DNA of 64,000 bases from Euprymna scolopes (GCA_053919585.1 CM132787.1), one strand, 5' to 3'; positions 1-57,214 are shown, counted from the stretch's first letter. Numbers and translations are program-made. The notes: generated from the sequence alone by a model not told the origin.

Positions 1-800
1 TTCACAAAACCTATATATTGGTAAATATAGATTGGTTCATTTATTCAATAAGGGAATACAAACAATTAGTAGAAAGGAGCCTTTATGTCAAGGCATTTCG
101 AAGTCTAATGTTTCTCATCAGAAGAGTAGAGAATATGCTAGGTAACATAGTGGGAATGCGGCGTCTAGCGTGGGATTCATTAGGAACGAAATAGATCGAT
201 TAAAATTACCATGGTGCCGGGGGGGGGTTATCGAATTTAAAATTAAGGAGGAGTGTATTATATAGACAGTTATGTAGAAAGGTGTATAGGGTATTTATCA
301 TAGTTTTAAATGTATGTAGTATACGTTTTAAGGCTTAAGGGGTGGCATAGTGTGGATGGGTGGTAATTCTATTTTATCGGCGTGTAAGATGTCTATTATC
401 TATGCAAGGACATTTAATTGATAGATGCAAACGAGACGACAACAGCACTATGAAGTGGTGTATAATTTTAAGAGCGGTATTATGGTGATAATTTAAGGCG
501 GAAAAGCGAATGAGTGTATTCTAAGCAGGGTTGGAATAAGGATATTACATGGGGCGTCCTGTACCAGGGTTTTAATTTAGTAAGGCGAGGGAGGGTTCAG
601 AAATGAGTTAAAAGGACAAGTTATGGAGTGGGTCTGGATGTGTAGTTGTGAGGCTATAATAATAAATTTAAGAATACCAATATATACTAGATAATATGTA
701 GACAAAATTCTAGGTGTCCTTGTGATAAGATATACAGGGAAGTGGGTTGGCGTATAAGGCAGAAGTATAAGGAAAGAGTAGCAAAGGTTGTGGAGGTGGA
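1..800 (-). mobile_element. Possible degraded Penelope-like element 3' region / pseudo-LTR
   Basis: Strongly G/A-skewed block. The minus strand carries a hammerhead-like core CTGATGA-GAA..TTC-GAAA (96-121), a motif typical of Penelope pseudo-LTRs. No readable ORF; boundaries uncertain. Confidence 0.3.
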
Positions 801-817
801 TAAAATGACAAAAGAAA

Positions 818-2981
818 ACTTATATCTAAAATTTGAAGTGTTTATACCCAAAATTGGCGGAGGAGTTTGGTAGAGTTCTCAAAAGTTCAAATCGTTGAAC
901 TTTGACCCCCTTAACAGCAAAATATTTGGCTGAAGACCGATCACGTTGATTTCCCCAAATCTCAGTACCCTGTATATCAAGTTTCGAGAATATAGGCTAA
1001 AAATTGACAGTTATTGCGTAGGGAAATGTACACAGACACGTTCAGGTCCTGGATATGACCTTAAACTATATCCGATGGTGAGGGCCCCAGCTTGCAGGCC
1101 TTAGGGAGTGTGGAGCCACCCTTTAATTGCCATTGCTCCCAGGTCCACTCTGACCCGGAGTGGTAGCACCTGTTAGGGTCCCAACTATGGGTTAAATAGA
1201 ATACCACTTAAAAAACAAATATACTAATATTCAAAATCACCAGATTCGGCAATAAATAACCTGAAAAGGGATGATATGCCGTAAAACAAAACAACCAACC
1301 AACCAACAGACACGTTCACTTTTATAGATATACTAGCATGGGTGCCCGGCGTTGCCCGGATGTTTCTAAGTGTATGCTGAGCAAAAAAAAGCGGTCATTT
1401 TTTTTAATTTGAACCCTATTATAACCCCTTAACATTTGGTGTTTTGGGCTCAAATCAAGTTATTAAGTTAGATCCATGTCCACGACATCTATATCGAAAA
1501 TATCAAGTGTTTAGACCCAAAATTGTCGAAGGAGTTTGGTAGAGTTCTCAAAGGTCAAATCGTTGAACTTTGACCCCTTAGCAGCCACATTTTTGGCCGA
1601 TAACCAACCACATCGATTTTCCCAAATCTAAGTGTCCTGTATATCAAATTTCGAGTTTGTACTTAAAATTGTCAGAGTTATTGCGTAATGAAATGTACAC
1701 AGACAGACAGACAGACACACAAACACCTTCACTTTTTAAGATATACTAGCATTTCACCCCGGCGTTTCCCGGTAGTTTAGAGGTGTATGCTTAGAAAAAT
1801 AAATAAACAAAAACAAAAATGGTCAATTTTTTTTTTAATTTGATCCCTATTATAACCCATTAAAATTTGTTGTTTTGCCCTTAAATCAAGTTATTAAGTT
1901 AGATCCATGTCCAAGGAACCTACTTCTAAAATTTCAAGTGTGTGGACCCAAAATTGTCGGAGGAGTTTGGTAGAGTTCTCAAATGTCAAATCGTTAAACT
2001 TTGACCCCTTAACAGCCAAATGTCTGACCGAAAACCGATCACATAGATATTCCCAAATCTCAGTACCCTGTATATTAAATTTCGAATCTGTAGACTGAAA
2101 ATTAAGAGTTATTGCGAAGGAAAATGTACACAGACAGACACACACACACAGACTCACAGACACATTCACTTTTATAGATATACTAGCATGGGTGTCTGGA
2201 GTTGCCCAGGTATTTGGAGGTGTATGTTTAGCAAAAAAAAAAAGCGGACAATATTTTTTAACTTTGACTCCTTAAAATGTATTGATTTGGGCTCAAATCA
2301 AGTTATAAAGTTAGATCTATTTCCAAGTAACATGTATCTAAAATTTCAAGTGTGTAGACCCAAATTATCGGAGGATTTTAGTAGAGTTCTCAAAGGTCAA
2401 ATCGTTGAACCTTGACCCCTTAATCGCCAAATTTCTGACCCAAAACCGATCACATCGATTTTCCCAAATTTCAGTCCCGTGTATATCAAACTTCGAGTCT
2501 GTAGACTAAAAATTGACAGAGTTATTGCGTAGGGATATGTACACCGATACACATACACAGACATACACTTTCACTTTTATAGATATATAGACTATCATTT
2601 CACCCCGGTGTTGCCCGGGTGTGTGGGGGTGAATATTGAGCATAAAAAAAGATCAATTTTTTAAAACTTTGATCCCTATTACGACCTCTTAAAATTTATG
2701 TCTTTCAGCTCTAATCAATAATAAATTAAGTAAGATTCATGTCCAAGTAACCTATATCTAAAATTTCAAATGTGTAGACCCAAAATTGTCGGAGGAGTTT
2801 GGTAGAGTTCTCAAAGGTCAAATCGTTGAACTTTGACCCCTTAACAAATTTCTGGCCGAAAATGAATTACTAATATTTCCCAAATCTCAGTACCTTCTAT
2901 ATGCATTTAGAGTCTGTAGACTAAACATTGACAGTGTTATTGCGTAGGAAAATGTACAGAGACACACAGACAGACACCTTC

Positions 2982-3057
<76 letters not shown>

Positions 3058-3678
3058 TAGCATTTCAACCCGACGTTGCCCGGGTATTTGGAGGTGACTA
3101 CTGAGCAAAAATAAAAGCGATCAATTTTTTTTTAATTCGACCCCTATTATGACCCTTTAACATTTATTGTTTTGGGCTCAAATCAAGTTATTAAGTTAGA
3201 GCCAGGTCCAAGGAACATGTATCTAAAATTTCAAGGGATTAGACTTAAAATTATCGGAGGAGTTTGGTAGAGTTTGCAAGCGACAAATCGTTGAACTTTG
3301 ACCCCTTAATCGCCAAATTTCGGGCCGAAACCGATCACATCGATGTTCCGAAATCTCAGTACTCTGTATATCAGATTTCGAGTCTGTAGACAAAAAATTG
3401 TCAGAGTTATTGCGTATGGAAATGTATACACACAGACAGACACTTTCACTTTTATAGATATACTAGAATGGGTGTCCGGCGTTTCCCGGGTGTTTGGAGA
3501 TGTATGCTGAGCAAACAAATAAACAAAAAAAAACGTCAATTTTTGTTTAACTTTGACCCCTTTTATGACCCCTTAAAATTTATAGTTTTGGGCTCAAATC
3601 GAGTTATTAAGTTAGATCCATGTCCAAGAAACCTTTATCTAAAATCTCAAGTATTTAGACCCAAAATTGTCGGAGGAG
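818..3678 (-). repeat. Tandem array of about 6 non-autonomous Helitron-like units (about 410-460 bp each)
   Basis: Junction motif ttttatagatataCTAG recurs at about 1333, 1746, 2183, 2592 (mutated), 3057 and 3463. On the minus strand each unit ends in a GC hairpin (CCGGGCAACGCCGGG) about 9 nt before CTAG, and the next starts with a TCTATAAAAGTG-like end plus a (TGTC)n microsatellite. This is the standard Helitron terminus layout. Confidence 0.85.
1045..1305 (+). mobile_element. 5'-truncated SINE / retroposed insertion with (AACC)n tail inside a Helitron-like unit
   Basis: Perfect 13-bp TSD ACAGACACGTTCA at 1032-1044 and 1306-1318; GC-richer body; tail acaaccaaccaacca. Confidence 0.85.
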
Positions 3679-11837: not shown

Positions 11838-13575
11838 TCGGATATATCTTAAGAGATGTCTTGTTATAATTCCATATATGTAAAACTATTGTCTGTAAAT
11901 ACATCTAGCACTGCAAGTGAATACATTTTAAAGTATGCGACAGATAAGCGTAGTTTACACAATACGAGCGGTGAAATCGTTAAAGCCAACATATTATTCT
12001 CAGAATGCTGATTGGTCATAAAAATATTTGAGTAGTAATTCAGTATCTTTTTTTTAATTATAAATTCGGGTTGTATGCATATTTTCTAATGAATTTATGT
12101 AATGTTTACTCGGATAAATGTATATATAAAGAGCAGAATACTTGAGTCATTTTTAAGAACATTACAAATTATTCAAATTTATATGCATAACTTGCTAAAA
12201 TGGTATGCCTGTATAAGTCTCCAACCCGGGACAGACATAACAAGAATAGTAATTGTAAACCAGGATGTCCAATTATAGCATACCGAAATATTAAGAGCAA
12301 CATTCTCCGTATGTTCTTAAATTTAATCACTTTGTATTCGTTTCAGAACAACCTTTCTATAACGCATAAATATTGTATTCGACTCTAAATTTTAAAGAAA
12401 CAAACATTAAACAATGCATATTCGTAAAATAAAATTAATGCTAAGTATATGTTTACGTGTTTGTTTGTTTGTTTGTTTTTTTACATATTTTTGTAATCAT
12501 TTGTATTTTTACGAGTTTATCTGTAGGGAAATTTATAATCTTATTAGCATGTTAAAGCCGATGTGATAGGTTATGAATAATCATTTAAACGACCGTTTAC
12601 GTTGCCGTTTATCTTGGGGTGAAACAGTTAGCTAAATCGATAATATAACGGGTTTTCACCTTGCTCATTAATATACTGCAAACTCTCTGTTGTGTGATCA
12701 TCTATTTGCATATAAGAATCAGAATTTGACATTTTAAAGATAGATTAAATCAAGTTTACTAAACATTGATTTTATTCGGTTCTATTGATTAAATAACGAA
12801 TGTTAGATTATAAGTAGTTTATCTCCTAACTAAAACAGCTCATTTCGTTTAGCTCGTTTTAATTTCGCGTCCACATAAACTCGGATGATTCGTTTTAATA
12901 GATGCAAATCTAATGACTCCTTATATTTGTGTTCATGCTATATTTTGTTTGCATGCTACATTTAACAGCATATGTTAATACCGAGCATATCTTATACGCT
13001 GATCAAAACAAAATTTAATTCGATAAATTTTAGAGTTAATCAGTCACATTCCTTAAAATAAATACGTTGTGGAAATTGTTTCATTTCGAAATATAAGAAT
13101 TTATAAGTATTTGTACAAATTACTATTTTATTGCTAGTGTTATTTTATTAAGAAATTAGACTAAACCGAATCAAATATAATCTAACATTCTACCCAGTAA
13201 GTCTTTTCTCTCTCATTATAACTTAAACAATACCTTAACAAAAATTAATCCACCAGAATTAATGGACCTTCCGAAAAGTTCCTGGACTTTTAGTTTAATA
13301 TATAATCACTGCATTGCCTTGTTGAATATATTTTATATCGAGTTTCCAATGGTAATTTTGTAAAGTTCATATCAGTTTACTCACTATTTCAACCTTTGTT
13401 TCGAAGGCAATGTTTGATTGACTAATCGAAAGAAACAGATATAGCAAACAAATCGTATATGCTTAAATAACGTGACAATCTCCTATTAGATTATCGTTTT
13501 AATTTTTTGCTTCTGTTAAAAAAAAAACGAAATTATGTATAAATGCAAGTGTAAGTGTGATTATTGTTCTTGCAG

Positions 13576-13692
13576 GAACGAAAGGAGAAAAAGGAGACAA
13601 AGGAAACACTGGACCAAAAGGAAATCAAGGTGAGAATGGGCGACACGGTGTTCGAGGACCTGCTGGCCCACCTGGACTATTAGGAAATAAAG
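13576..13692 (+). CDS. Collagen triple-helix exon (internal, 117 bp, phase 1-1)
   Basis: ttgttcttgcAG|...|GTAAGA. Translates as 13 uninterrupted triplets (G)TK GEK GDK GNT GPK GNQ GEN GRH GVR GPA GPP GLL GNK, with a split Gly codon at both ends. Confidence 0.93.
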
Positions 13693-46065: not shown

Positions 46066-47194
46066 TATATGATAAATATCGAACATATTACATATCTACA
46101 TGAAAAATCATTCTGCCTGCTATAATTCCTGATGAACTAATGTATATGCCATGTTTAATTCTACATGTCCATGTTAATATATGCGTATTTTTATCGAAAT
46201 AATTTTTAATTTAACTAGTTGTCAGATATAACCACTTCCAGAAACAAATAAAATAGAGAAATACTATTCAGAACTAAATATATTTACTTGTTTTCTTTTA
46301 ATACAAAAAAATGTTCGGATTTGAAAAAATGCATTTGGCAATTTTTTCTATTTGGAAAAATGTCTCAATTTGCAGGTGGTTATTAAAATGTGTTTTTATA
46401 TTTTAAGTTGAAATACAAATCTAATAAAGACATGTTTTACCAACATCTTTATAAGATGTAAAGATATGTAAATTGCGAAACTTTCACGTACTAGATAAGT
46501 AAATCTTTCTAAGATAGTAGCAAGCATGTGAGAATTTAGATCCATCAAAGTATATACGCAACATTCACCGATACAAACAATAAGAGATACTGAACGCATT
46601 TGTAAAATATACGATGATATATGTGAATGCTTTGCTTGGAACTGCTCGTTGATATGGTGTATGCTCTTTGTGTAAATGCAGCATTGGTCTGATTTGTTAG
46701 CTTGCTTGGCTTGCATCAATTTTCATTCCATTTTGTTTTTTTTTTGTTTTTTTAATTTTTAAATAATTTGCTTCGCGTCGGTATGCTTTGAACGTTTGTA
46801 TTTTCTCAATAAACCAAGGAGAAACTGCAGAAAAACAATCACAATATTCGGAACATTTCTGAAATATCATGTTTCGGATTTTTCTTTCAAGTGAGGATTG
46901 ATAATTTGGGTGTTGGAATTACTCCGATTAATATTACCATTTACATTTTTTATCTACATGGTTCCGATCAGTGTAAACTCTGATAATTTCACGATGAAGG
47001 TTTCGTGCTGAGTAATGTCGACATCGGTAATTCAAACTTGTTAATCAGAATTATATATATATAACTACTTCATTTATTCGCATAAATTTAATATATGAAA
47101 GTATAGATTTATGCGTAAACTTTAACTATTTACTTCAAAAGTTCTCAATACGTAGGTAGAGCTAGTTAGTAATTTATAAAATATATATGGCGAT

Positions 47195-47248
47195 TAAGCT
47201 ACACTGAATATTCTGCGTTTCATCCAACTATAGGATTCGTCAGGCTTA
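47195..47248 (-). ncRNA. Type I hammerhead ribozyme (antisense copy)
   Basis: Stem I TAAGC/GCTTA (5/5), core CTGACGA, stem II ATCC-tatagtt-GGAT, GAAA, stem III ACGCAGAAT/ATTCAGTGT, cleavage triplet GTA. Confidence 0.85.
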
Positions 47249-47662
47249 TGCGCGAATTCTGTCGTAGCTTCTTGTTTTTATATATGTTGAGGATTTCTAG
47301 TCGGCCAATCAGCTTTCTAGTATCCTAAAACTAACAATAACAATAGGAAAAAAACAAATAAATAAATTAAATAAACATGAATATACATAAACGATCACAT
47401 ACATATATGTATGTGTATGTATATATATGTATATATGTATATGTATGTGCATTGTTGTGTGCACATAGGTATATTTATATGTATAAAAAAAGGAGAACGA
47501 CCACCTAAACCCACTAACCTAGTTCTAAAACAGATCCTTTGTTTGATAAAATGCATGCCCATTGGCTGGTAGGAAGGAGCGCGGTGGATACTAGAAAGCT
47601 GATTGGCCGACTAGAAATCCTCAACATATATAAAAACAAGAAGCAACGACAGAATTCGCGCA

Positions 47663-47716
47663 TAAGCCTGACGAATCCTATAGTTGGATGAAACGCAGAA
47701 TATTCAGTGTAGCTCA
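47663..47716 (+). ncRNA. Type I hammerhead ribozyme (sense copy)
   Basis: CTGACGA 47668-74, stem II ATCC/GGAT, GAAA 47690-93, GTA 47709-11 (predicted cut after 47711). Stem I TAAGC/GCTCA has one A-C mismatch. Confidence 0.8.
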
Positions 47717-47742
47717 ATCGCCATATATATTTTATAAATTAC

Positions 47743-47777
<35 letters not shown>

Positions 47778-49857
47778 GATTTCTTATTCACTTATATTTT
47801 ATTGTTCTTTCAAATGCGAACCGTTTTTAGATATACCTTTAGTGATATTCGTGAAGTCGAAAATGATTTTAGTAGTAGATGTACAAACTATGAAATAAGA
47901 GATTACTTGATTACAAAAATCGATTTCAGTAAAGTTAGAAAGGTAGAACACAACACATTTGTTTCTTTTATTAATGTATATAATGGAATTTAATTGTGAT
48001 TGATGAACTTCGGGTTTCTTGTTCGCATTTTATAGAAAATGAAACAAATATTTCCTCTTTACGTTAATGAGTAATTTTCTATATGGAAAAAATCTAGGTC
48101 ATGAGTATGATAACGACAACAAAATTCATTATGTGTATAGTCGTTTCAAAGAAACTTATTGAACACAGAAGTGATGGAAAAAACCAAAGTGTCTTATTTA
48201 TCGTTTAAATATTTTTTTCCAAAACAATTATCACCTATCATGAGGAGGATTTTTTTTATAAAGAGTTGTAGAATAATGATTTCCTCATTTAAAAAATATA
48301 TTATAAAGCTGCACAGTACATTATATATGTCTATGATATTTATGCATATGGTTGATTAATATTTAGATTTATAACATAAACCTCGACCCAAGTGTCCACA
48401 CACAAAAACACACATATTTACACAAAATAAACGTCTTTGTTATATAAAAGACAAATTATTACGGCAATTCTGAGATGTGTAGTGGTACTTTACTGGTGAT
48501 TTTGCAATGAAGTTATATTCTCTATTCAAATATTGTGTACAGACAATAGAAATAACTCTATGAATGATATTTTACCAAGCTGACTTGCATATCCAAACTA
48601 TACAGTTGGAATCCTACATCGGGTTTCTTCTTTTTCTGTTAAATGAAAAGAAAATTCTAATTGTGTTCTTATTTCTATACTACACTGTCGTGAGAAACGT
48701 CTTAGATGTTAGTATATTTTAATACATAACGCTTCTTGGTCTGTCGGTATCCCTCCGCCTTCTCTCTTTTTCTATCTCTCTCTCTCTATATATATGTAAT
48801 AAATGAAAAGGTATATTCTTAGTTTTTATAAAAAATAAAACAAGAATTATGCTTTGCAGATTACGTATTACATGTACAATTTTCCTGCAAACATGAGAAA
48901 ATTGTCATAAATTGCTTCCTGCATTATTCACAGTAATTCATATACTCATGAATATGTTCGTTAGATATATATCAAAAATAAAATATCAGCCCACACATTA
49001 AGGTAGGAGCTCTTAACGTAAAAATCCTTATATATGTACATATAAATAAGTAGCAAGCCTTCCGAGGTTTCCTTGTCGTATAATATGATATTTTAATTCA
49101 TACAAATTTTGTGTTTATTTTTATAGACCCAATTGTCTGTCGATTATATTTTACTCAATAAATTATAGTGGTTTCAAAGGTTTTTAAAAGAATAGTTAAG
49201 TGCCCTCAGCACGAATTGATACAAAAATATTGAAACTCCAGCTTTTGTACCTATCGTTTGAGCTATGAACAGAGGAATAAGAAATAATAAATAAAATGCA
49301 TATTTGCACCTAAGTATGCGAGAACGTTTAATCCTCTTATGCCAACCAAGCTGCATTTTGTTTTCAATTTGATCCCTTAGCAATAGTATTGCCGCTTATA
49401 ACCAGATCGAATTTATTCCAAAGATATAAATATCCTATATACTTTCAAGTGTCTAGATCAGAAGTTGGCAGAGTAGTTTGGTAGCGACTGTTCTTTACAC
49501 GGACAATAAGAATATATATATATGTGTGTGTGTGCGCGCACGTGTATGTATGTCACAATTAAAGACTGTAACTTATAATTTACAAGAATTTATTTTAAGG
49601 AAGAATACTCAAAAAGAAGTACTCGCAGAGAAAAACATTCTTTGAAACTCCGAATATTAAAAAATTCTTACTTTTTGTGTATCATGTCGAACAATTATAG
49701 TCTATAAATGATAATTTACATTATTATAAAGTATTTTTATGACAAACAATTTCCTATTTTGAATGTAATCAGTTTTTATTTTTTTGGGGGGGGTCTATAT
49801 AAACATAATTATGTATATTCGCTTCACGTTTACTGTAGCGTTTGGCTTGTACACTTC

Positions 49858-51025: not shown

Positions 51026-51211
51026 TAATTAGCATATATTAAATATAAATCGTATTTAACCATTATCCTCGAATGGCCTATGGGCCTTGATAAGTGGTGA
51101 TTCCTTTATAAAACTGAATATGCGCATAAAACGGAAAACAAATGGTCAGAAATGTCATTTATACATTTTTAGGATTTAAACAATCATTTGTGCCAAACAT
51201 ATGTTACATTA

Positions 51212-51500
51212 CGTGGCGCAGTTGATAGAGACATTGAATCTCTACGGTTCCAGATAAGCATTGTCTGAAGATAGCCGTTTCGATTCTACCCATAGCCAGA
51301 TAAATGCTTACTTGGCCAGAAACCTGGTGAGACGGCAACAACTACGGATGGAAGCGATTGCTGAGAATGCAGTTTGGAGATTCGAAGTTCCTATCTTTCG
51401 CGATTACCACCTGACGAAGGCCAGAGGAATAGTTGGTTGAAACGTTGTGAAACAACAACTAATGAAGATGAGAATAATAGTACGTAATAAATAAATTAAT
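51212..51500 (+). mobile_element. tRNA-derived SINE with a hammerhead-like 3' region
   Basis: A-box TGGCGCAGTTG (51214), B-box-like GTTTCGATTC (about 51276), A-rich tail. 13-bp TSD ATATGTTACATTA / ATACGTTACATTA (51199-211, 51501-513; 12/13). Confidence 0.8.
51408..51449 (+). ncRNA. Minimal type I hammerhead-like motif
   Basis: CAC-CTGACGA-A-GGCCAG..TTGGTT-GAAA-CGTT-GTG: 3-bp stem I CAC/GTG, stem II with G-U pairs, palindromic AACGTT stem III (would need a dimer). Confidence 0.55.
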
Positions 51501-52296
51501 ATACGTTACATTATTTCATAATCAGCTTACTACTCTAGATTAGTCAAACGAAATAGTGTAGAATTATCTGATAAGGTTAGTTATTTTTAGTCTAGGTGAC
51601 AAAATGAACAAACTAATATTAAGTTAAGGCAATTCTGTGTTGAACACAAGTTGCCAACTACCACTCCTTTTCATAAAGATGGGATCGCCGATCCACGAAA
51701 ATGCACAGCCAATATAGAAACATTTTAGCTGATTTTAAGTTACATCGAACGTGAAACTCGTATTAAAAGATACTGTCTTTGTTGCCAGGATGCGTTCCTT
51801 CCAAGCTTGTCGAATGAGATCATATACAACGTTTGAGTTACATGTTCACATAATGTAAACAGGTTACGAACCTATACAAGCGATTCGAATATATACGTGA
51901 AATTCGTAAAATATGTTATTTATTGTTTAAAGCTGAATATTGCTAGGTTATCATTCGAACTGGACTTAATAGAATGGAAATATATTTCGAATACACTTGC
52001 ATTAATTTAGAGATATACACTGTATTCTGAATCCTACAATAATTAGAATTTGAACATATGTAACGATTGAACTTCTACCGTTTCAACTAATCTAACATGA
52101 ATAAACTAAGTATCAAAAATGCGTATATTAACGTAGTCTAATATTTACGAATTTTAATAAGATTCTTAACGAAATGTGAACTTATACAGGTGCTGTTTTC
52201 TATTGTAGAAGAAGAGATTTCGTCAATTTAACAATTAACTCTAGATAGGCTATTAAAATAGATTTTAAAAATGTAATACTTCCGACTTACTTTCTT

Positions 52297-55353: not shown

Positions 55354-55871
55354 TATATATATATATATTATTATTAGTATTATTATTAATATTATTATTA
55401 TTATTATGTATCCACAATTTAATTATTACAGCTTAATATTTTCAGAAAAACACTTAAAGTATTGGACAAGTCATCAATTTAAATTTACGATGAATTATTA
55501 TTAACGAATAGTTCAGAAATATTTAAGAAAGGAACATATTTTATAAAAGCAACATTTAAAATATATCCTTACATTTATTTACAAAATAATTTATATTCTA
55601 AGATATCGATTAGATTCACTTGAAGATATCTATTTTCATAGCAGTTAAATGAACATAATTAAAATCAGAACTTAAATATTCGCATATGATTTCTAAATTA
55701 TACAACTATGGTTTATCGCGTTTTTAAGATAACGGTGTTGCATTAATATCATAAATAAACGTTTCCACCAGATTTGCATCATTTGAAACGTGTAATTATC
55801 CAATAAATAACTAGAAATAAATCGATATAGGCTAATTTTAAGGAATGTGTCTGTTTGTGTTCTTTTCACAG

Positions 55872-55988
55872 GGGATTCGGGTCACATCGGGCCACCAGGC
55901 CCCGTTGGTCCCAAGGGAGATGTGGGAATTATGGGAAGACCTGGGATTCCAGGAAAGCCAGGCAAAGACGGTCACCCCGGACCAACAG
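55872..55988 (+). CDS. Collagen triple-helix exon (internal, 117 bp, phase 1-1)
   Basis: gttcttttcacAG|...|GTAATA. 13 triplets (G)[38 protein letters not shown]; frame-compatible with 13576-13692. Confidence 0.93.
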
Positions 55989-57214
55989 GTAATAGAACTA
56001 TCTTAGAATCTTTTTTTATCACCTGTCACAGTATTTCAATTACCCATATTCTTATTTATTTCTCTCTTTTCTTCCTTGAAAGTTTAACGTTTTGTTTATT
56101 AATGCTTCTATTTTCTTGTACGTCAATTTTTAATGGAGACACTTGTAAGCATATTTACTTTCATGTGAGATTAGATGTAGAACGGTAACCGGAAATTATC
56201 ATAATGGGCTTCCGGTGTGGTAATGGAAAATATTGTGATATTTGTTGATATGAAAAAGATTCTTCTGAAATGTGTTTGTATTACTGGTTGATGATATCAT
56301 CTGCTGTTAATGACTCATACATAACCCTATGTTGTAGTTCATTTATGTTGCCACTCGTCCATTACATTATCCTCATCTGTGTGTGATATTCTCATCTCAA
56401 TACCATTTCTTTCACGTTGTTCAAAGCATATATATTTGCTTTTATGTTTTTTCTTCCTTTCATTATTTCCCTGTCTATTACTTTTTGTCTTTCCATTCTT
56501 TCTTGGACTTACTGCTATACCCATGTTTCTTCTAACATTGTCAACTTCTTCTCACTCACTCGCATACTGATCATATTTTACTCATCCTTCTGTGTGTTCC
56601 CTGTTTTCGCTGAACTAATTCAAAACCCTCTTCTTAGTTTCGTTGCATTGAAATCTAACAATAACTAACCTCTATATCCGTATGTATTTGATTAATACAT
56701 ACCCCATAACATTATTGTATATGTTGGCAAAAACGAATAAAAACTACTAGTATAGTAGTATGTAGTTATATTATGCTAATGTACCTCTAGGATATCTTGC
56801 TTAATCAGTTAGATAATGTGTACATGAGAATCGCGTAAATGATTAAGAAATAACTAAAAGGTTTAATTGACAAGTCATAATATTAAAGTTTCGTTTTGTT
56901 TAGAACTTTGAGAAGTTGAGCAATTAAAACTACTTCGCTTATATTTGGATTTCATTCTCACAATTTGTCGGCCGAAGTAATCTCTGACCTATTTTCATAC
57001 GTTGAAATCTGGAATCTCTCATAAAATTTACTGGGATAGCGTTTTATCATTTCATAAACAATGATCATGTAGAAATCTTAATTACTGCTTGTAATATGTT
57101 GAGTATTTAAAATTACTTTTTACTTAAAATTCAATCTTCCGCCTCCAGAATATGTTCAGCACTTGTTAATAACGTCGTCTGTTGAACCATCAGTAAAAAT
57201 AAATAGTTCGATTG

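What the first reader, a model, noticed from the sequence alone, without database searches (positions are those of the whole stretch)
47167..47744. Fold-back element with a complete hammerhead ribozyme on each strand, inside a collagen intron
Seen: two 159-bp inverted arms differing at only 2 positions, so the structure is young. Each arm holds all parts of a type I hammerhead (stem I, CUGACGA, 4-bp stem II, GAAA, long near-palindromic stem III, GUA site), both pointing outward, with no ORF between them. Known: hammerheads mark Penelope pseudo-LTRs and retrozymes, usually as direct repeats and usually in minimal form; Penelope insertions can leave inverted termini. Inference: this may be a non-coding mobile unit in which a transcript of either polarity carries one ribozyme plus its antisense. 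The RNA could then switch between a long hairpin (ribozyme off, dsRNA/siRNA source) and a self-cleaving fold, loosely reminiscent of viroid-like ambisense ribozyme pairs. The stem II closing pair is A-U rather than the usual G-C, so activity is not guaranteed.
Basis: partly seen in the sequence, partly recalled or inferred. Interest (0 to 1): 0.85.

Follow-up and report, generated by a model that had tools for sequence, protein, structure and literature searches.

The report
Inverted Penelope retroelement tails with hammerheads
This is the usual insertion scar of a very abundant, young Penelope-like retrotransposon: two shortened copies of the element's 3' end joined head to head in a collagen intron, each carrying the family's hammerhead ribozyme motif, and not a new kind of mobile element.

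Summary
Arms 47167-47325 and 47586-47744 are 159-nt inverted copies with 2 mismatches. Each contains a complete type I hammerhead (HH) motif facing outward.

The arms are not the ends of a fold-back element. [quoted passage not shown]

- The family has at least 44,700 copies in this 5.9-Gb genome, mostly about 99% alike.
- The window holds two 5'-truncated copies joined head to head in a (TA)n tract. The left copy is on the minus strand and carries the optional 103-nt 'tail'. The right copy is on the plus strand and has no tail.
- This architecture is published for PLEs: an inverted 5'-truncated partner, a tail at one end only, and (TA)n targets.
- It recurs thousands of times here with variable junctions. 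Of about 3,630 short fold-backs, 98% have exactly one tail.
- This window's junction matched none of the 34 arms compared.

Subfamily changes in the HH fall at N7, loop 2, the unpaired helix III position and a pair-preserving 10.1. This suggests constraint. However, Rfam does not score the motif, and RNA-seq shows no ends at the predicted cut. A read-through transcript would fold into a -341 kcal/mol hairpin. The scan has already noted similar PLE hairpins elsewhere in this genome.

The parts
47052..47063 (.). (TA)6 tract at the outer end of the left copy. It is a remnant of the (TA)n target or 3' junction.
   Evidence: Sequence read directly. All 34 arms compared end in (TA)n, either directly or after the tail.
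47064..47166 (-). 103-nt optional 3' 'tail' (X') of the left, minus-strand PLE copy.
   Evidence: The same segment follows the arm in 16 of 34 arms; the others run straight into (TA)n. It matches many loci as one block with the arm. The PLE 'tail' is described in PMC8557442 and PMC11167929.
47167..47325 (-). Left arm: the last 159 nt of the family's 3' UTR, copy 5'-truncated at 47325. The hammerhead motif lies at 47256-47184, with the predicted cut between 47200 and 47199.
   Evidence: Private change at 47266.
47326..47585 (+). Upstream 3' UTR part (Y) of the right, plus-strand PLE copy, 5'-truncated at 47326. It includes a TG/TA-rich simple repeat at 47394-47456.
   Evidence: 47326-47744 matches other loci as one block at 90-97%. 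Reads from other copies run on upstream of 47326 with a common sequence (loose ends). In L041 this block starts 17 nt after the ORF stop. The microRNA-like Rfam hits here are low-complexity matches far below gathering scores.
47586..47744 (+). Right arm: the same 159 nt, without a tail. The hammerhead motif lies at 47655-47727, with the predicted cut at 47711|47712. A private U-to-C change at 47715 breaks a stem I pair.
   Evidence: Reads show T at 47715 in nearly all family RNA.
47745..47777 (.). (TA)n tract flanking the right copy (target microsatellite).

Best explanation
The 726-nt structure 47052-47777 is one insertion of a young, extremely abundant Penelope-like retrotransposon (PLE) into a (TA)n microsatellite inside a collagen intron. 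It consists only of two 5'-truncated copies of the element's 3' end, joined head to head.

Shown here:
- The arm and its neighbours (Y, A, X') are the 3' UTR that follows an ORF with an RT fold and a GIY-YIG nuclease.
- The copies are truncated from the 5' side.
- All copies end in (TA)n.
- About 4 in 10 arms have a head-to-head partner, with tails outward.
- Almost every such pair has the optional tail on exactly one side.

Inferred from published PLE biochemistry (PMC11167929):
- The element's protein nicks both strands of an AT-rich target and primes cDNA synthesis on both.
- Reverse transcription starts at either of two internal sites of the RNA, which gives ends with and without the tail.
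- Here both cDNAs stopped early, after 274 nt and 419 nt, and were joined at 47325|47326.

Each copy carries the family's type I hammerhead because that motif sits 33 nt upstream of the proximal RT start site, so even the shortest copies include it. The hammerhead is probably functional in active master copies, either for unit-length processing of multimeric transcripts or as a protein-assisted RNA structure. In this intronic, non-transcribed, mutated fold-back it is most likely inert. Any read-through RNA would form a long perfect hairpin instead.
For: Repeat anatomy.

Autonomous element (L041, own genome C6:66494000-66499000):
- ORF 1657-3456 with motifs FDIxDFYPSI and YRDDG, and VVY...YIG...R...H...E...N.
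- The AlphaFold model matches retron, TERT, group II and R2 reverse transcriptases (E down to 6e-7, probability 1.0).
- The C-terminal 145 aa hit Pfam GIY-YIG at 24.1 bits against a cut-off of 22.6.
- That domain's best structural matches are T4 EndoII and I-TevI.
- More than 80 genomic ORF copies are 85-98% identical, many with open frames of 720-790 aa.

Copy number: the exact 26-mer across the cut site occurs 44,714 times.

Pairing:
- Among the first 100 of these on contig C1, 17 minus/plus pairs lie within 1.4 kb, against one plus/minus pair.
- 2,168 short head-to-head junctions exist.

One tail per pair:
- 9 of 9 larger pairs.
- 3,552 loci with one tail, against 27 with two tails and about 51 with none.

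Literature:
- PMC8557442: inverted 5'-truncated copy, tail often at one end only, (TA)n targets.
- PMC11167929: both strands cleaved and extended, two RT start sites equal the tail, and the HHR is not needed for insertion.
- PMC4209133: HHRs in PLE repeats, and paired HHRs on opposite strands.

HH constraint: recurrent subfamily differences fall at N7 (all four bases seen), 10.1 (A or G, both pair with U11.1), loop 2 and the unpaired 15.5. Core changes are rare singletons (listings; loose ends and variant table).
Against: - No direct (tandem) pLTR of this family was seen in the loci held.
- The full-length 5' end was not defined.
- No empty site or target-site duplication can be read inside (TA)n.
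- The tail is 103 nt here, against the 30-40 nt in the literature.
- The mechanism steps (nicking of both strands, two RT start sites) are taken from a lizard PLE in vitro and were not tested for this family.
- Pfam and PDB sequence searches on the whole ORF were silent.
- For the hammerhead: there is no Rfam match, the 10.1-11.1 pair is A-U instead of the conserved G-C, fold energy is not above shuffles, and no read ends lie at the cut site.
Confidence: 0.88

Rival explanations
1. A distinct non-coding fold-back element. The two-arm unit is itself mobile. Its transcripts of either polarity carry one ribozyme plus its antisense and switch between a hairpin (dsRNA source) and a self-cleaving fold.
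For: The two-arm layout recurs thousands of times. About half of the short fold-backs share one junction sequence, which could reflect copying of a master. Family RNA of both orientations is present in poly(A) libraries.
Against: - Junctions vary widely, with arms 260 nt to 2.7 kb apart.
- The short junctions show many variants centred on palindromic microhomologies (GCGC, GC, TA, AGCT). This fits repeated de novo joining.
- This window's junction matched none of the 34 arms compared.
- The pairs are asymmetric, with one tail.
- No skip or back-joint reads suggest circles, and there is no depth in the locus flanks.
- The hairpin is about 25 times more stable than the ribozyme fold.
Confidence: 0.05
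2. Two independent insertions of the same PLE family, in opposite orientation, into the same (TA)n hot spot.
For: The family targets (TA)n tracts and is very abundant. The two copies have different 3' ends.
Against: - At about one copy per 130 kb, chance neighbours within 1.4 kb should be about 1 per 100. 17 were observed, almost all in the tails-outward orientation.
- Independent insertions would give two-tail, one-tail and no-tail pairs in roughly 1:2:1 ratio. The observed counts are 27: 3,552: 51.
- The two copies abut with no target DNA between them.
Confidence: 0.04
3. A DNA transposon or MITE of the fold-back type with 159-bp terminal inverted repeats.
For: Long, near-perfect inverted termini, no ORF inside and an AT-rich target.
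Against: - The 'TIR' length is specific to this copy. Other copies extend the homology inward into the 3' UTR and the ORF, and outward into the tail on one side only.
- Single arms follow an RT/GIY-YIG ORF.
- Copies form a 5'-truncation series.
- No transposase is linked.
Confidence: 0.02

Closest known systems
[quoted passage not shown] 2021, PMC8557442)
   Same: - Single ORF with RT plus a C-terminal GIY-YIG domain with Cys motifs.
- Heavy 5' truncation.
- An inverted 5'-truncated partner copy forming inverted repeats.
- An optional 3' tail at one end only.
- AT-rich or (TA)n targets.
- A hammerhead motif in the terminal repeat region.
   Different: - The tail is 103 nt rather than 30-40 nt.
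- The clade was not assigned.
- No direct pLTR was seen in the loci held.
- The copy number is very high (at least 44,700 arms) at about 99% identity.
PLE hammerheads (Cervera and De la Pena 2014, PMC4209133), including 'dual min-HHRs 100-700 bp apart on opposite strands' in Schistosoma
   Same: Type I topology, location in the PLE terminal region, thousands of copies, and pairs on opposite strands.
   Different: - Metazoan PLE HHRs are mostly minimal, with a 0-2 bp palindromic helix III that needs dimers. This one has a 6-pair helix III that could fold as a monomer.
- It has a 4-bp helix II and A10.1-U11.1 instead of the conserved G-C.
- It is not scored by Rfam RF00163.
PAc, the Anolis Poseidon element studied in vitro (Frangieh et al. 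2024, PMC11167929)
   Same: - Two alternative 3' ends, explained there by two internal RT start sites.
- Both target strands are used.
- The HH cut site lies a short distance upstream of the RT start sites.
- Uncleaved RNA is the main template.
- No RNA-seq ends at the cut site.
   Different: - A different host and family.
- None of the biochemistry was tested here.
- In vitro, PAc showed no difference in start site between strands. Here the two ends of a pair almost always differ.
Metazoan non-LTR retrozymes (Cervera and de la Pena 2020, PMC7229834; Li et al. 2026 preprint, 10.64898/2026.07.22.740005)
   Same: Non-coding, type I hammerhead-bearing and PLE-related sequences. The genome also holds ~410-nt tandem arrays of canonical HHs.
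   Different: Retrozymes are direct tandem repeats that yield circular RNAs. This is an inverted pair, with no tandem unit and no circle-type joints.

Membership tests
Penelope-like element (EN+) | Reverse transcriptase domain | tested here: met
   The model of the L041 ORF matches retron, DRT, TERT (3du5, 6usr), G2L4 and R2 RTs, with E down to 5.8e-7. FDIxDFYPSI and YRDDG are invariant in 29 homologues. Pfam RVT_1 hit only 1 of 29.
Penelope-like element (EN+) | GIY-YIG endonuclease fused to the RT (C-terminal in canonical clades) | tested here: met
   Pfam PF01541 at 24.1 bits against a cut-off of 22.6 on the last 145 aa. The best structural matches are T4 EndoII and I-TevI. Y, YxG, R, H, E, N and Cys columns are invariant.
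Penelope-like element (EN+) | Complex insertions: 5' truncation with an inverted 5'-truncated copy at the 5' side | tested here: met
   The window copy consists of 274-nt and 419-nt copies joined head to head.
Penelope-like element (EN+) | [quoted passage not shown] | tested here: met
   9 of 9 larger pairs. 3,552 one-tail loci against 27 and about 51. The tail is longer (103 nt) than described.
Penelope-like element (EN+) | Direct pseudo-LTRs from partial tandems | not tested
Two same-strand neighbours 138 and 371 nt apart were seen in a listing only.
Hammerhead ribozyme, type I | Conserved core (C3 U4 G5 A6 N7 G8 A9, G12 A13 A14, A15.1-U16.1, H17) between three helices, open at helix I | tested here: met
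   Direct reading, my descriptor scan and the minimum-free-energy folds of both 73-nt segments.
Hammerhead ribozyme, type I | G10.1-C11.1 pair closing helix II | tested here: not met
   A10.1-U11.1 in this subfamily. G10.1.U11.1 in a sister subfamily.
Hammerhead ribozyme, type I | Score at or above the Rfam RF00163 gathering threshold | tested here: not met
   No hammerhead row at the gathering score or at E<=10. The same model finds 73 or more canonical HHs elsewhere in the genome. The long helix III and loop 2 probably cost the score, but this was not shown.
Hammerhead ribozyme, type I | Conservation pattern or covariation supporting the fold | tested here: inconclusive
   Recurrent differences lie at N7, 10.1 (pair kept), loop 2 and 15.5, and C15.2-to-U keeps its pair. 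True double compensations occur only in single copies. The tally was made by eye from listings.
Hammerhead ribozyme, type I | Self-cleavage at the predicted site | tested here: inconclusive
   No pile of read starts or ends at 47711/47712 or 47200/47199 in three poly(A) RNA-seq runs. Short copies beginning at the cut site next to (TA)n number 54 loci, against 2, 13 and 228 at control sites. About 6-7 of 28 nearby 5' ends lie at the cut site. No bench test was possible.
Non-LTR retrozyme | Direct tandem repeats, each with a hammerhead, giving circular RNA | tested here: not met
   The arms are inverted, not direct. No back-joint reads were found.
Fold-back or MITE DNA transposon | Fixed terminal inverted repeats with target-site duplication and no RT-linked origin | tested here: not met
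   Arm extent differs between copies, and the arms are the 3' UTR of an RT ORF.

The most novel reading that the evidence does not exclude
The fold-backs of this family may record a specific, nearly obligatory integration pathway not yet described. Two cDNAs made at the two nicks of one target would run to a common end at the 5' edge of the hammerhead domain, where either an RNA 5' end or a pause could lie. They would anneal through the palindrome GCGC, and the intermediate would then be resolved so that exactly one side keeps the 103-nt tail (98% of about 3,630 short fold-backs).

A bolder variant is that the resulting HH/anti-HH hairpins are themselves transcribed and used as a dsRNA or small-RNA source, or as a self-propagating palindromic non-autonomous element. 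The hammerhead here would then be a monomer-competent A10.1-U11.1 variant that is active in vivo.
Probability: 0.12. Interest if true: 0.6.

Novelty: new member of a known kind. Interest (0 to 1): 0.27.

Why it matters
For the finding itself, very little. It is a dead, intronic scar of a known class of retroelement, and its ribozyme pair is a consequence of how that class inserts.

The family behind it is more useful. It has tens of thousands of near-identical copies, many open ORFs, a clear two-site 3' end and thousands of fold-backs with readable junctions. This makes it a natural data set for the still poorly understood PLE integration mechanism, including why pairs form, why one tail is kept and where cDNAs end. 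It also offers a way to ask what the PLE hammerhead is for.

It is also a practical warning. Rfam's hammerhead model misses this motif, so PLE hammerheads with a long helix III are under-counted.

Tried and rejected
- **Rfam cmscan.** Run at the gathering score on the window, at E<=10 on 47100-47800 and at E<=10 on 47640-47735. No hammerhead was found. The microRNA-like rows at 47371-47474 are TG/TA low-complexity matches far below their thresholds.
- **Fold energies.** The energies of the HH segments are not better than shuffles.
- **Whole-ORF sequence searches.** Pfam on the whole ORF and on homologues and PDB sequence or profile searches were silent. The domains were recognised only by structure and by scanning the C-terminal domain alone.
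- **Hammerheads in related PLE contigs.** L053, L055 and L056 have no CUGANGA on the sense strand. L054 has a minimal HHR in direct repeats flanking its ORF. The motifs are not alignable with this one, so no cross-family covariation was possible.
- **Covariation among held copies.** Only 9 distinct HH sequences occur in 55 copies, which is too little variation for a formal test.
- **Read ends at the cut site.** None were found.
- **MITE/TIR reading and two-independent-insertions reading.** Both were rejected on the counts.
- **Further genome DNA.** Junctions were therefore read from pattern-match listings instead.

Full report
**1. The observation**

The inverted repeat is real. The repeat finder reports arms 47148-47325 and 47586-47763 at 94%. 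The pairwise alignment shows a clean 159-nt core, 47167-47325 against 47586-47744, with two mismatches.

Each arm contains every part of a type I hammerhead (HH):
- CUGACGA core.
- A 4-bp helix II (AUCC/GGAU) with a 7-nt loop.
- GAAA.
- A helix III of six pairs with one A.A mismatch and an AUAU loop.
- A GUA site.
- A helix I of 5 bp, a 2x2 internal loop and 3 bp.

The 73-nt segments fold into exactly this three-way junction as their minimum-free-energy structure. The energies are -13.6 kcal/mol for the left arm and -10.3 kcal/mol for the right arm. My own descriptor scan finds the motif. The predicted cuts are at 47711|47712 (plus strand) and 47200|47199 (minus strand).

Two caveats apply. 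The energies are no better than shuffled sequence. Rfam's covariance models do not report a hammerhead at the gathering score, at E<=10 on 701 nt or at E<=10 on 96 nt. The same RF00163 model finds at least 73 canonical hammerheads elsewhere in this genome.

There is no coding ORF between the arms. Two collagen-type GXY exons lie on the plus strand at 13575-13700 and 55871-55996, so 'inside a collagen intron' is plausible.

**2. What the arms are**

The window lies in a 5.9-Gb genome. Run labels and earlier scan notes call it a mollusc. The arm is a high-copy repeat. The first search scored 40 copies at 99-100% identity out of 1,476 candidates. An exact 26-mer spanning the predicted cut site occurs 44,714 times.

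Comparing 34 arms with their flanks shows that homology does not stop at the arm:
- Inward, almost all arms continue into a common sequence, Y. This corresponds to window 47326-47585 and continues further upstream in other copies.
- Outward, arms end in one of two ways. They either run straight into a (TA)n tract, or they continue through a 103-nt segment X' (the reverse complement of 47064-47166) and then into (TA)n.

In locus L041, the block Y-A-X' starts 17 nt after the stop codon of a 599-aa ORF.

**3. The ORF is that of a Penelope-like element (PLE)**

- The ORF and 28 homologues (37-53% identity, about 710 aa) share invariant FDIxDFYPSI and YRDDG motifs. They also share a C-terminal VVY...YIG...R...H...E...N pattern with conserved cysteines.
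- Sequence searches of the whole protein against Pfam and PDB were silent.
- The AlphaFold model (mean pLDDT 76.9) matches reverse transcriptases, including retron RTs, DRT9, Tribolium and yeast TERT, G2L4 and R2, with E down to 5.8e-7.
- The last 145 aa alone pass Pfam's GIY-YIG threshold, at 24.1 bits against 22.6.
- That domain's model (pLDDT 91.8) has T4 EndoII and I-TevI as its two best structural matches.

RT plus GIY-YIG in one ORF defines an EN+ PLE. The genome holds more than 80 ORF copies at 85-98% amino-acid identity, many uninterrupted over 720-790 aa. The family is therefore young and possibly still active.

**4. What the window structure is**

The left part (47064-47325, minus strand) is a copy reduced to A plus the tail X', followed by (TA)6 at 47052-47063. 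The right part (47326-47744, plus strand) is a copy reduced to Y plus A without the tail, followed by (TA)n at 47745-47777.

The two 5'-truncated copies meet head to head at 47325|47326. RNA reads from other copies continue upstream of 47326 with a common sequence. This confirms that 47326 is a truncation point and not the start of the repeat.

Each arm differs from the family consensus at one private position, 47266 and 47715. So the 'two mismatches' mean two consensus copies that have each picked up one mutation. The change at 47715 breaks a helix I pair of the right-arm hammerhead.

**5. Does the layout recur?**

Yes, massively, but not as a fixed unit.
- Of about 26 distinct elements first sampled, at least 13 have an inverted partner with tails outward. 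The arms are 260 nt to 2.7 kb apart.
- Among the first 100 exact 26-mer matches on contig C1, 17 minus/plus pairs lie within 1.4 kb. There is a single plus/minus pair, and about 1 would be expected by chance at that density.
- 2,168 loci have the two hammerhead 5' parts within 30 nt of each other.
- Junctions differ between loci.
- This window's left arm is the only one of 34 whose inner end is not followed by the consensus Y.

This is what the PLE literature describes:
- Paired hammerheads '~100-700 bp' apart 'in opposite strands' in Schistosoma (PMC4209133).

**6. One tail per pair**

All 9 larger pairs I could classify have one end with X' and one without. In L041 the tail is on the ORF-bearing copy. 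In the element covered by L003/L043 it is on the inverted partner.

Pattern counts for fold-backs of about 170-200 nt are:

| End state | Loci |
|---|---|
| One tail | 3,552 |
| Two tails | 27 |
| No tail | about 51 (some spurious) |

That is 98% with exactly one tail. This excludes two independent insertions and shows that a pair is the product of one event with structurally different ends.

Frangieh et al. (PMC11167929) showed three things for a lizard PLE. The protein cleaves and extends both target strands. Reverse transcription starts at two internal RNA sites, whose interval is the 'tail'. Uncleaved RNA is the main template. I adopt this as the mechanism by inference. The strict one-tail rule is not explained by that work, which saw no strand difference in vitro.

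**7. Junction hot spot (family level, not this locus)**

About half of the short fold-backs join as GGCTTATGCGCATAAGCC. That is two copies overlapping in the palindrome GCGC at arm positions 73-76, the 5' edge of the hammerhead's helix I. Other junctions use GC, TA or AGCT palindromes.

Single short copies abutting (TA)n also pile up nearby:

| Arm position | Loci |
|---|---|
| 80 | 228 |
| 127 (the HH cut site) | 54 |
| 98 | 13 |
| 29 | 2 |

Two explanations remain open. Template RNAs may often begin at about position 75. Alternatively, two nascent cDNAs may anneal at the first G+C-rich palindrome they synthesise. I could not decide between these.

**8. Is the hammerhead functional?**

For:
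- The motif is complete.
- It sits in a PLE terminal region, 33 nt upstream of the proximal RT start. This is the same arrangement as in the Anolis element.
- Recurrent, subfamily-level differences fall where a hammerhead tolerates them. These are N7 (C, A, G and U all seen), 10.1 (A or G, both pairing with U11.1), loop 2 (five variants) and the unpaired 15.5 (A, C, G).
- C15.2-to-U and G15.3-to-A changes keep their pairs.
- Changes at A6, A9, G12, A13 and A14 appear only as rare singletons (tallied by eye, not formally).

Against:
- The conserved G10.1-C11.1 pair is A-U.
- Rfam is silent.
- Three poly(A) RNA-seq runs show no excess of read starts or ends at the cut site. Frangieh et al. reported the same for their element.
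- Short copies starting at the cut site are enriched only modestly. About 6-7 of 28 local 5' ends lie there. This cannot be separated from TA and AGCT microhomology effects.

I put the chance that the consensus motif cleaves in vivo at about one half.

**9. This locus**

RNA depth is zero in the unique flanks (46950-47042 and 47756-47850). About 70% of the reads laid run on into sequence unlike the stretch, so they come from other copies, and both directions are covered about equally. Nothing shows that this locus is transcribed.

If the intron were transcribed, the region would fold into a 159-bp hairpin of -340.8 kcal/mol (z = -27.9). In the collagen sense the antisense arm comes first, so the ribozyme arm would be zipped up as it emerges. 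The 'switch' is therefore unlikely here. A dsRNA by-product is possible but untested.

**10. Verdict**

The structure is a new member of a known kind. The hammerhead variant is of modest interest because of its long helix III and its A-U at 10.1-11.1. The family-level regularities are of some interest to PLE specialists: the 98% one-tail rule, the GCGC junction hot spot and the copy number of at least 44,700. Earlier notes of this scan describe similar PLE-type hairpin insertions of other families in the same genome.

Noticed in passing
own genome, pattern counts (arm positions count from window 47586 = 1): 5' ends of short copies cluster at arm positions 73-80, the 5' edge of the hammerhead domain. 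There are 2,168 head-to-head junctions, about half exactly GGCTTATGCGCATAAGCC (overlap in the palindrome GCGC). 228 single copies abut (TA)n at position 80, against 54, 13 and 2 at other sites. The cause may be an RNA start or cDNA annealing; this is not resolved.
   Followed up: partly
own genome: Near-absolute one-tail rule. There are 3,552 short fold-backs with the 103-nt tail at one end only, 27 with two tails and about 51 with none.
   Followed up: yes
window 47180 / 47201: An RNA-seq 'opposite strands' joint 47180<->47201 is seen in three runs (14, 6 and 35 reads), 2 nt from the predicted cut site. A rarer one at 47196<->47200 lies in the palindrome AGCT. It may be a transcribed tiny fold-back elsewhere or a cDNA snap-back at an RNA end.
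   Followed up: no
window 30639-30752 (+): 5S rRNA match at 40.5 bits, just above the gathering score of 38, with several non-canonical pairs. It may be a 5S pseudogene or a 5S-derived repeat.
   Followed up: no
window 84-121 (-): My relaxed descriptor finds a second hammerhead-like motif (CUGAUGA ... GAAA ... UA with 4/3/2-bp helices). It is probably chance or a decayed copy of another family.
   Followed up: no
own genome C8:10432194-10435515 and C3:89840417-89842627: Canonical RF00163 hammerheads (48-53 bits) occur in tandem arrays with a period of about 410 nt. The C3 array switches strand in the middle. These are retrozyme-like arrays unrelated in sequence context to this finding.
   Followed up: no
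L054:1653 and L054:4025: A metagenome contig encodes a 38%-identical PLE protein. It has the same minimal hammerhead (palindromic helix III CUCGAG) in direct repeats on both sides of the ORF, a classic pLTR arrangement.
   Followed up: partly
L041:2845-3024 (aa ~397-456 of the ORF): A long poly-Asn low-complexity linker, an (AAT)n-type repeat, lies between the RT and the GIY-YIG domain. It is disordered in the model (pLDDT about 30).
   Followed up: no
own genome C10:35198871-35199331 and C44:18156061-18158298: There are clusters of the 33-nt post-cut-site fragment flanked by (TA)n, some 48 nt apart. These are mini-arrays built from the smallest possible copy (cut site to proximal RT start).
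   Followed up: no
window 51199-51513: An earlier first-stage note (s1-247383) reports a tRNA-headed SINE ending in a Penelope-type minimal hammerhead in this same window. It shares no sequence with the family studied here (no BLAST hit).
   Followed up: no
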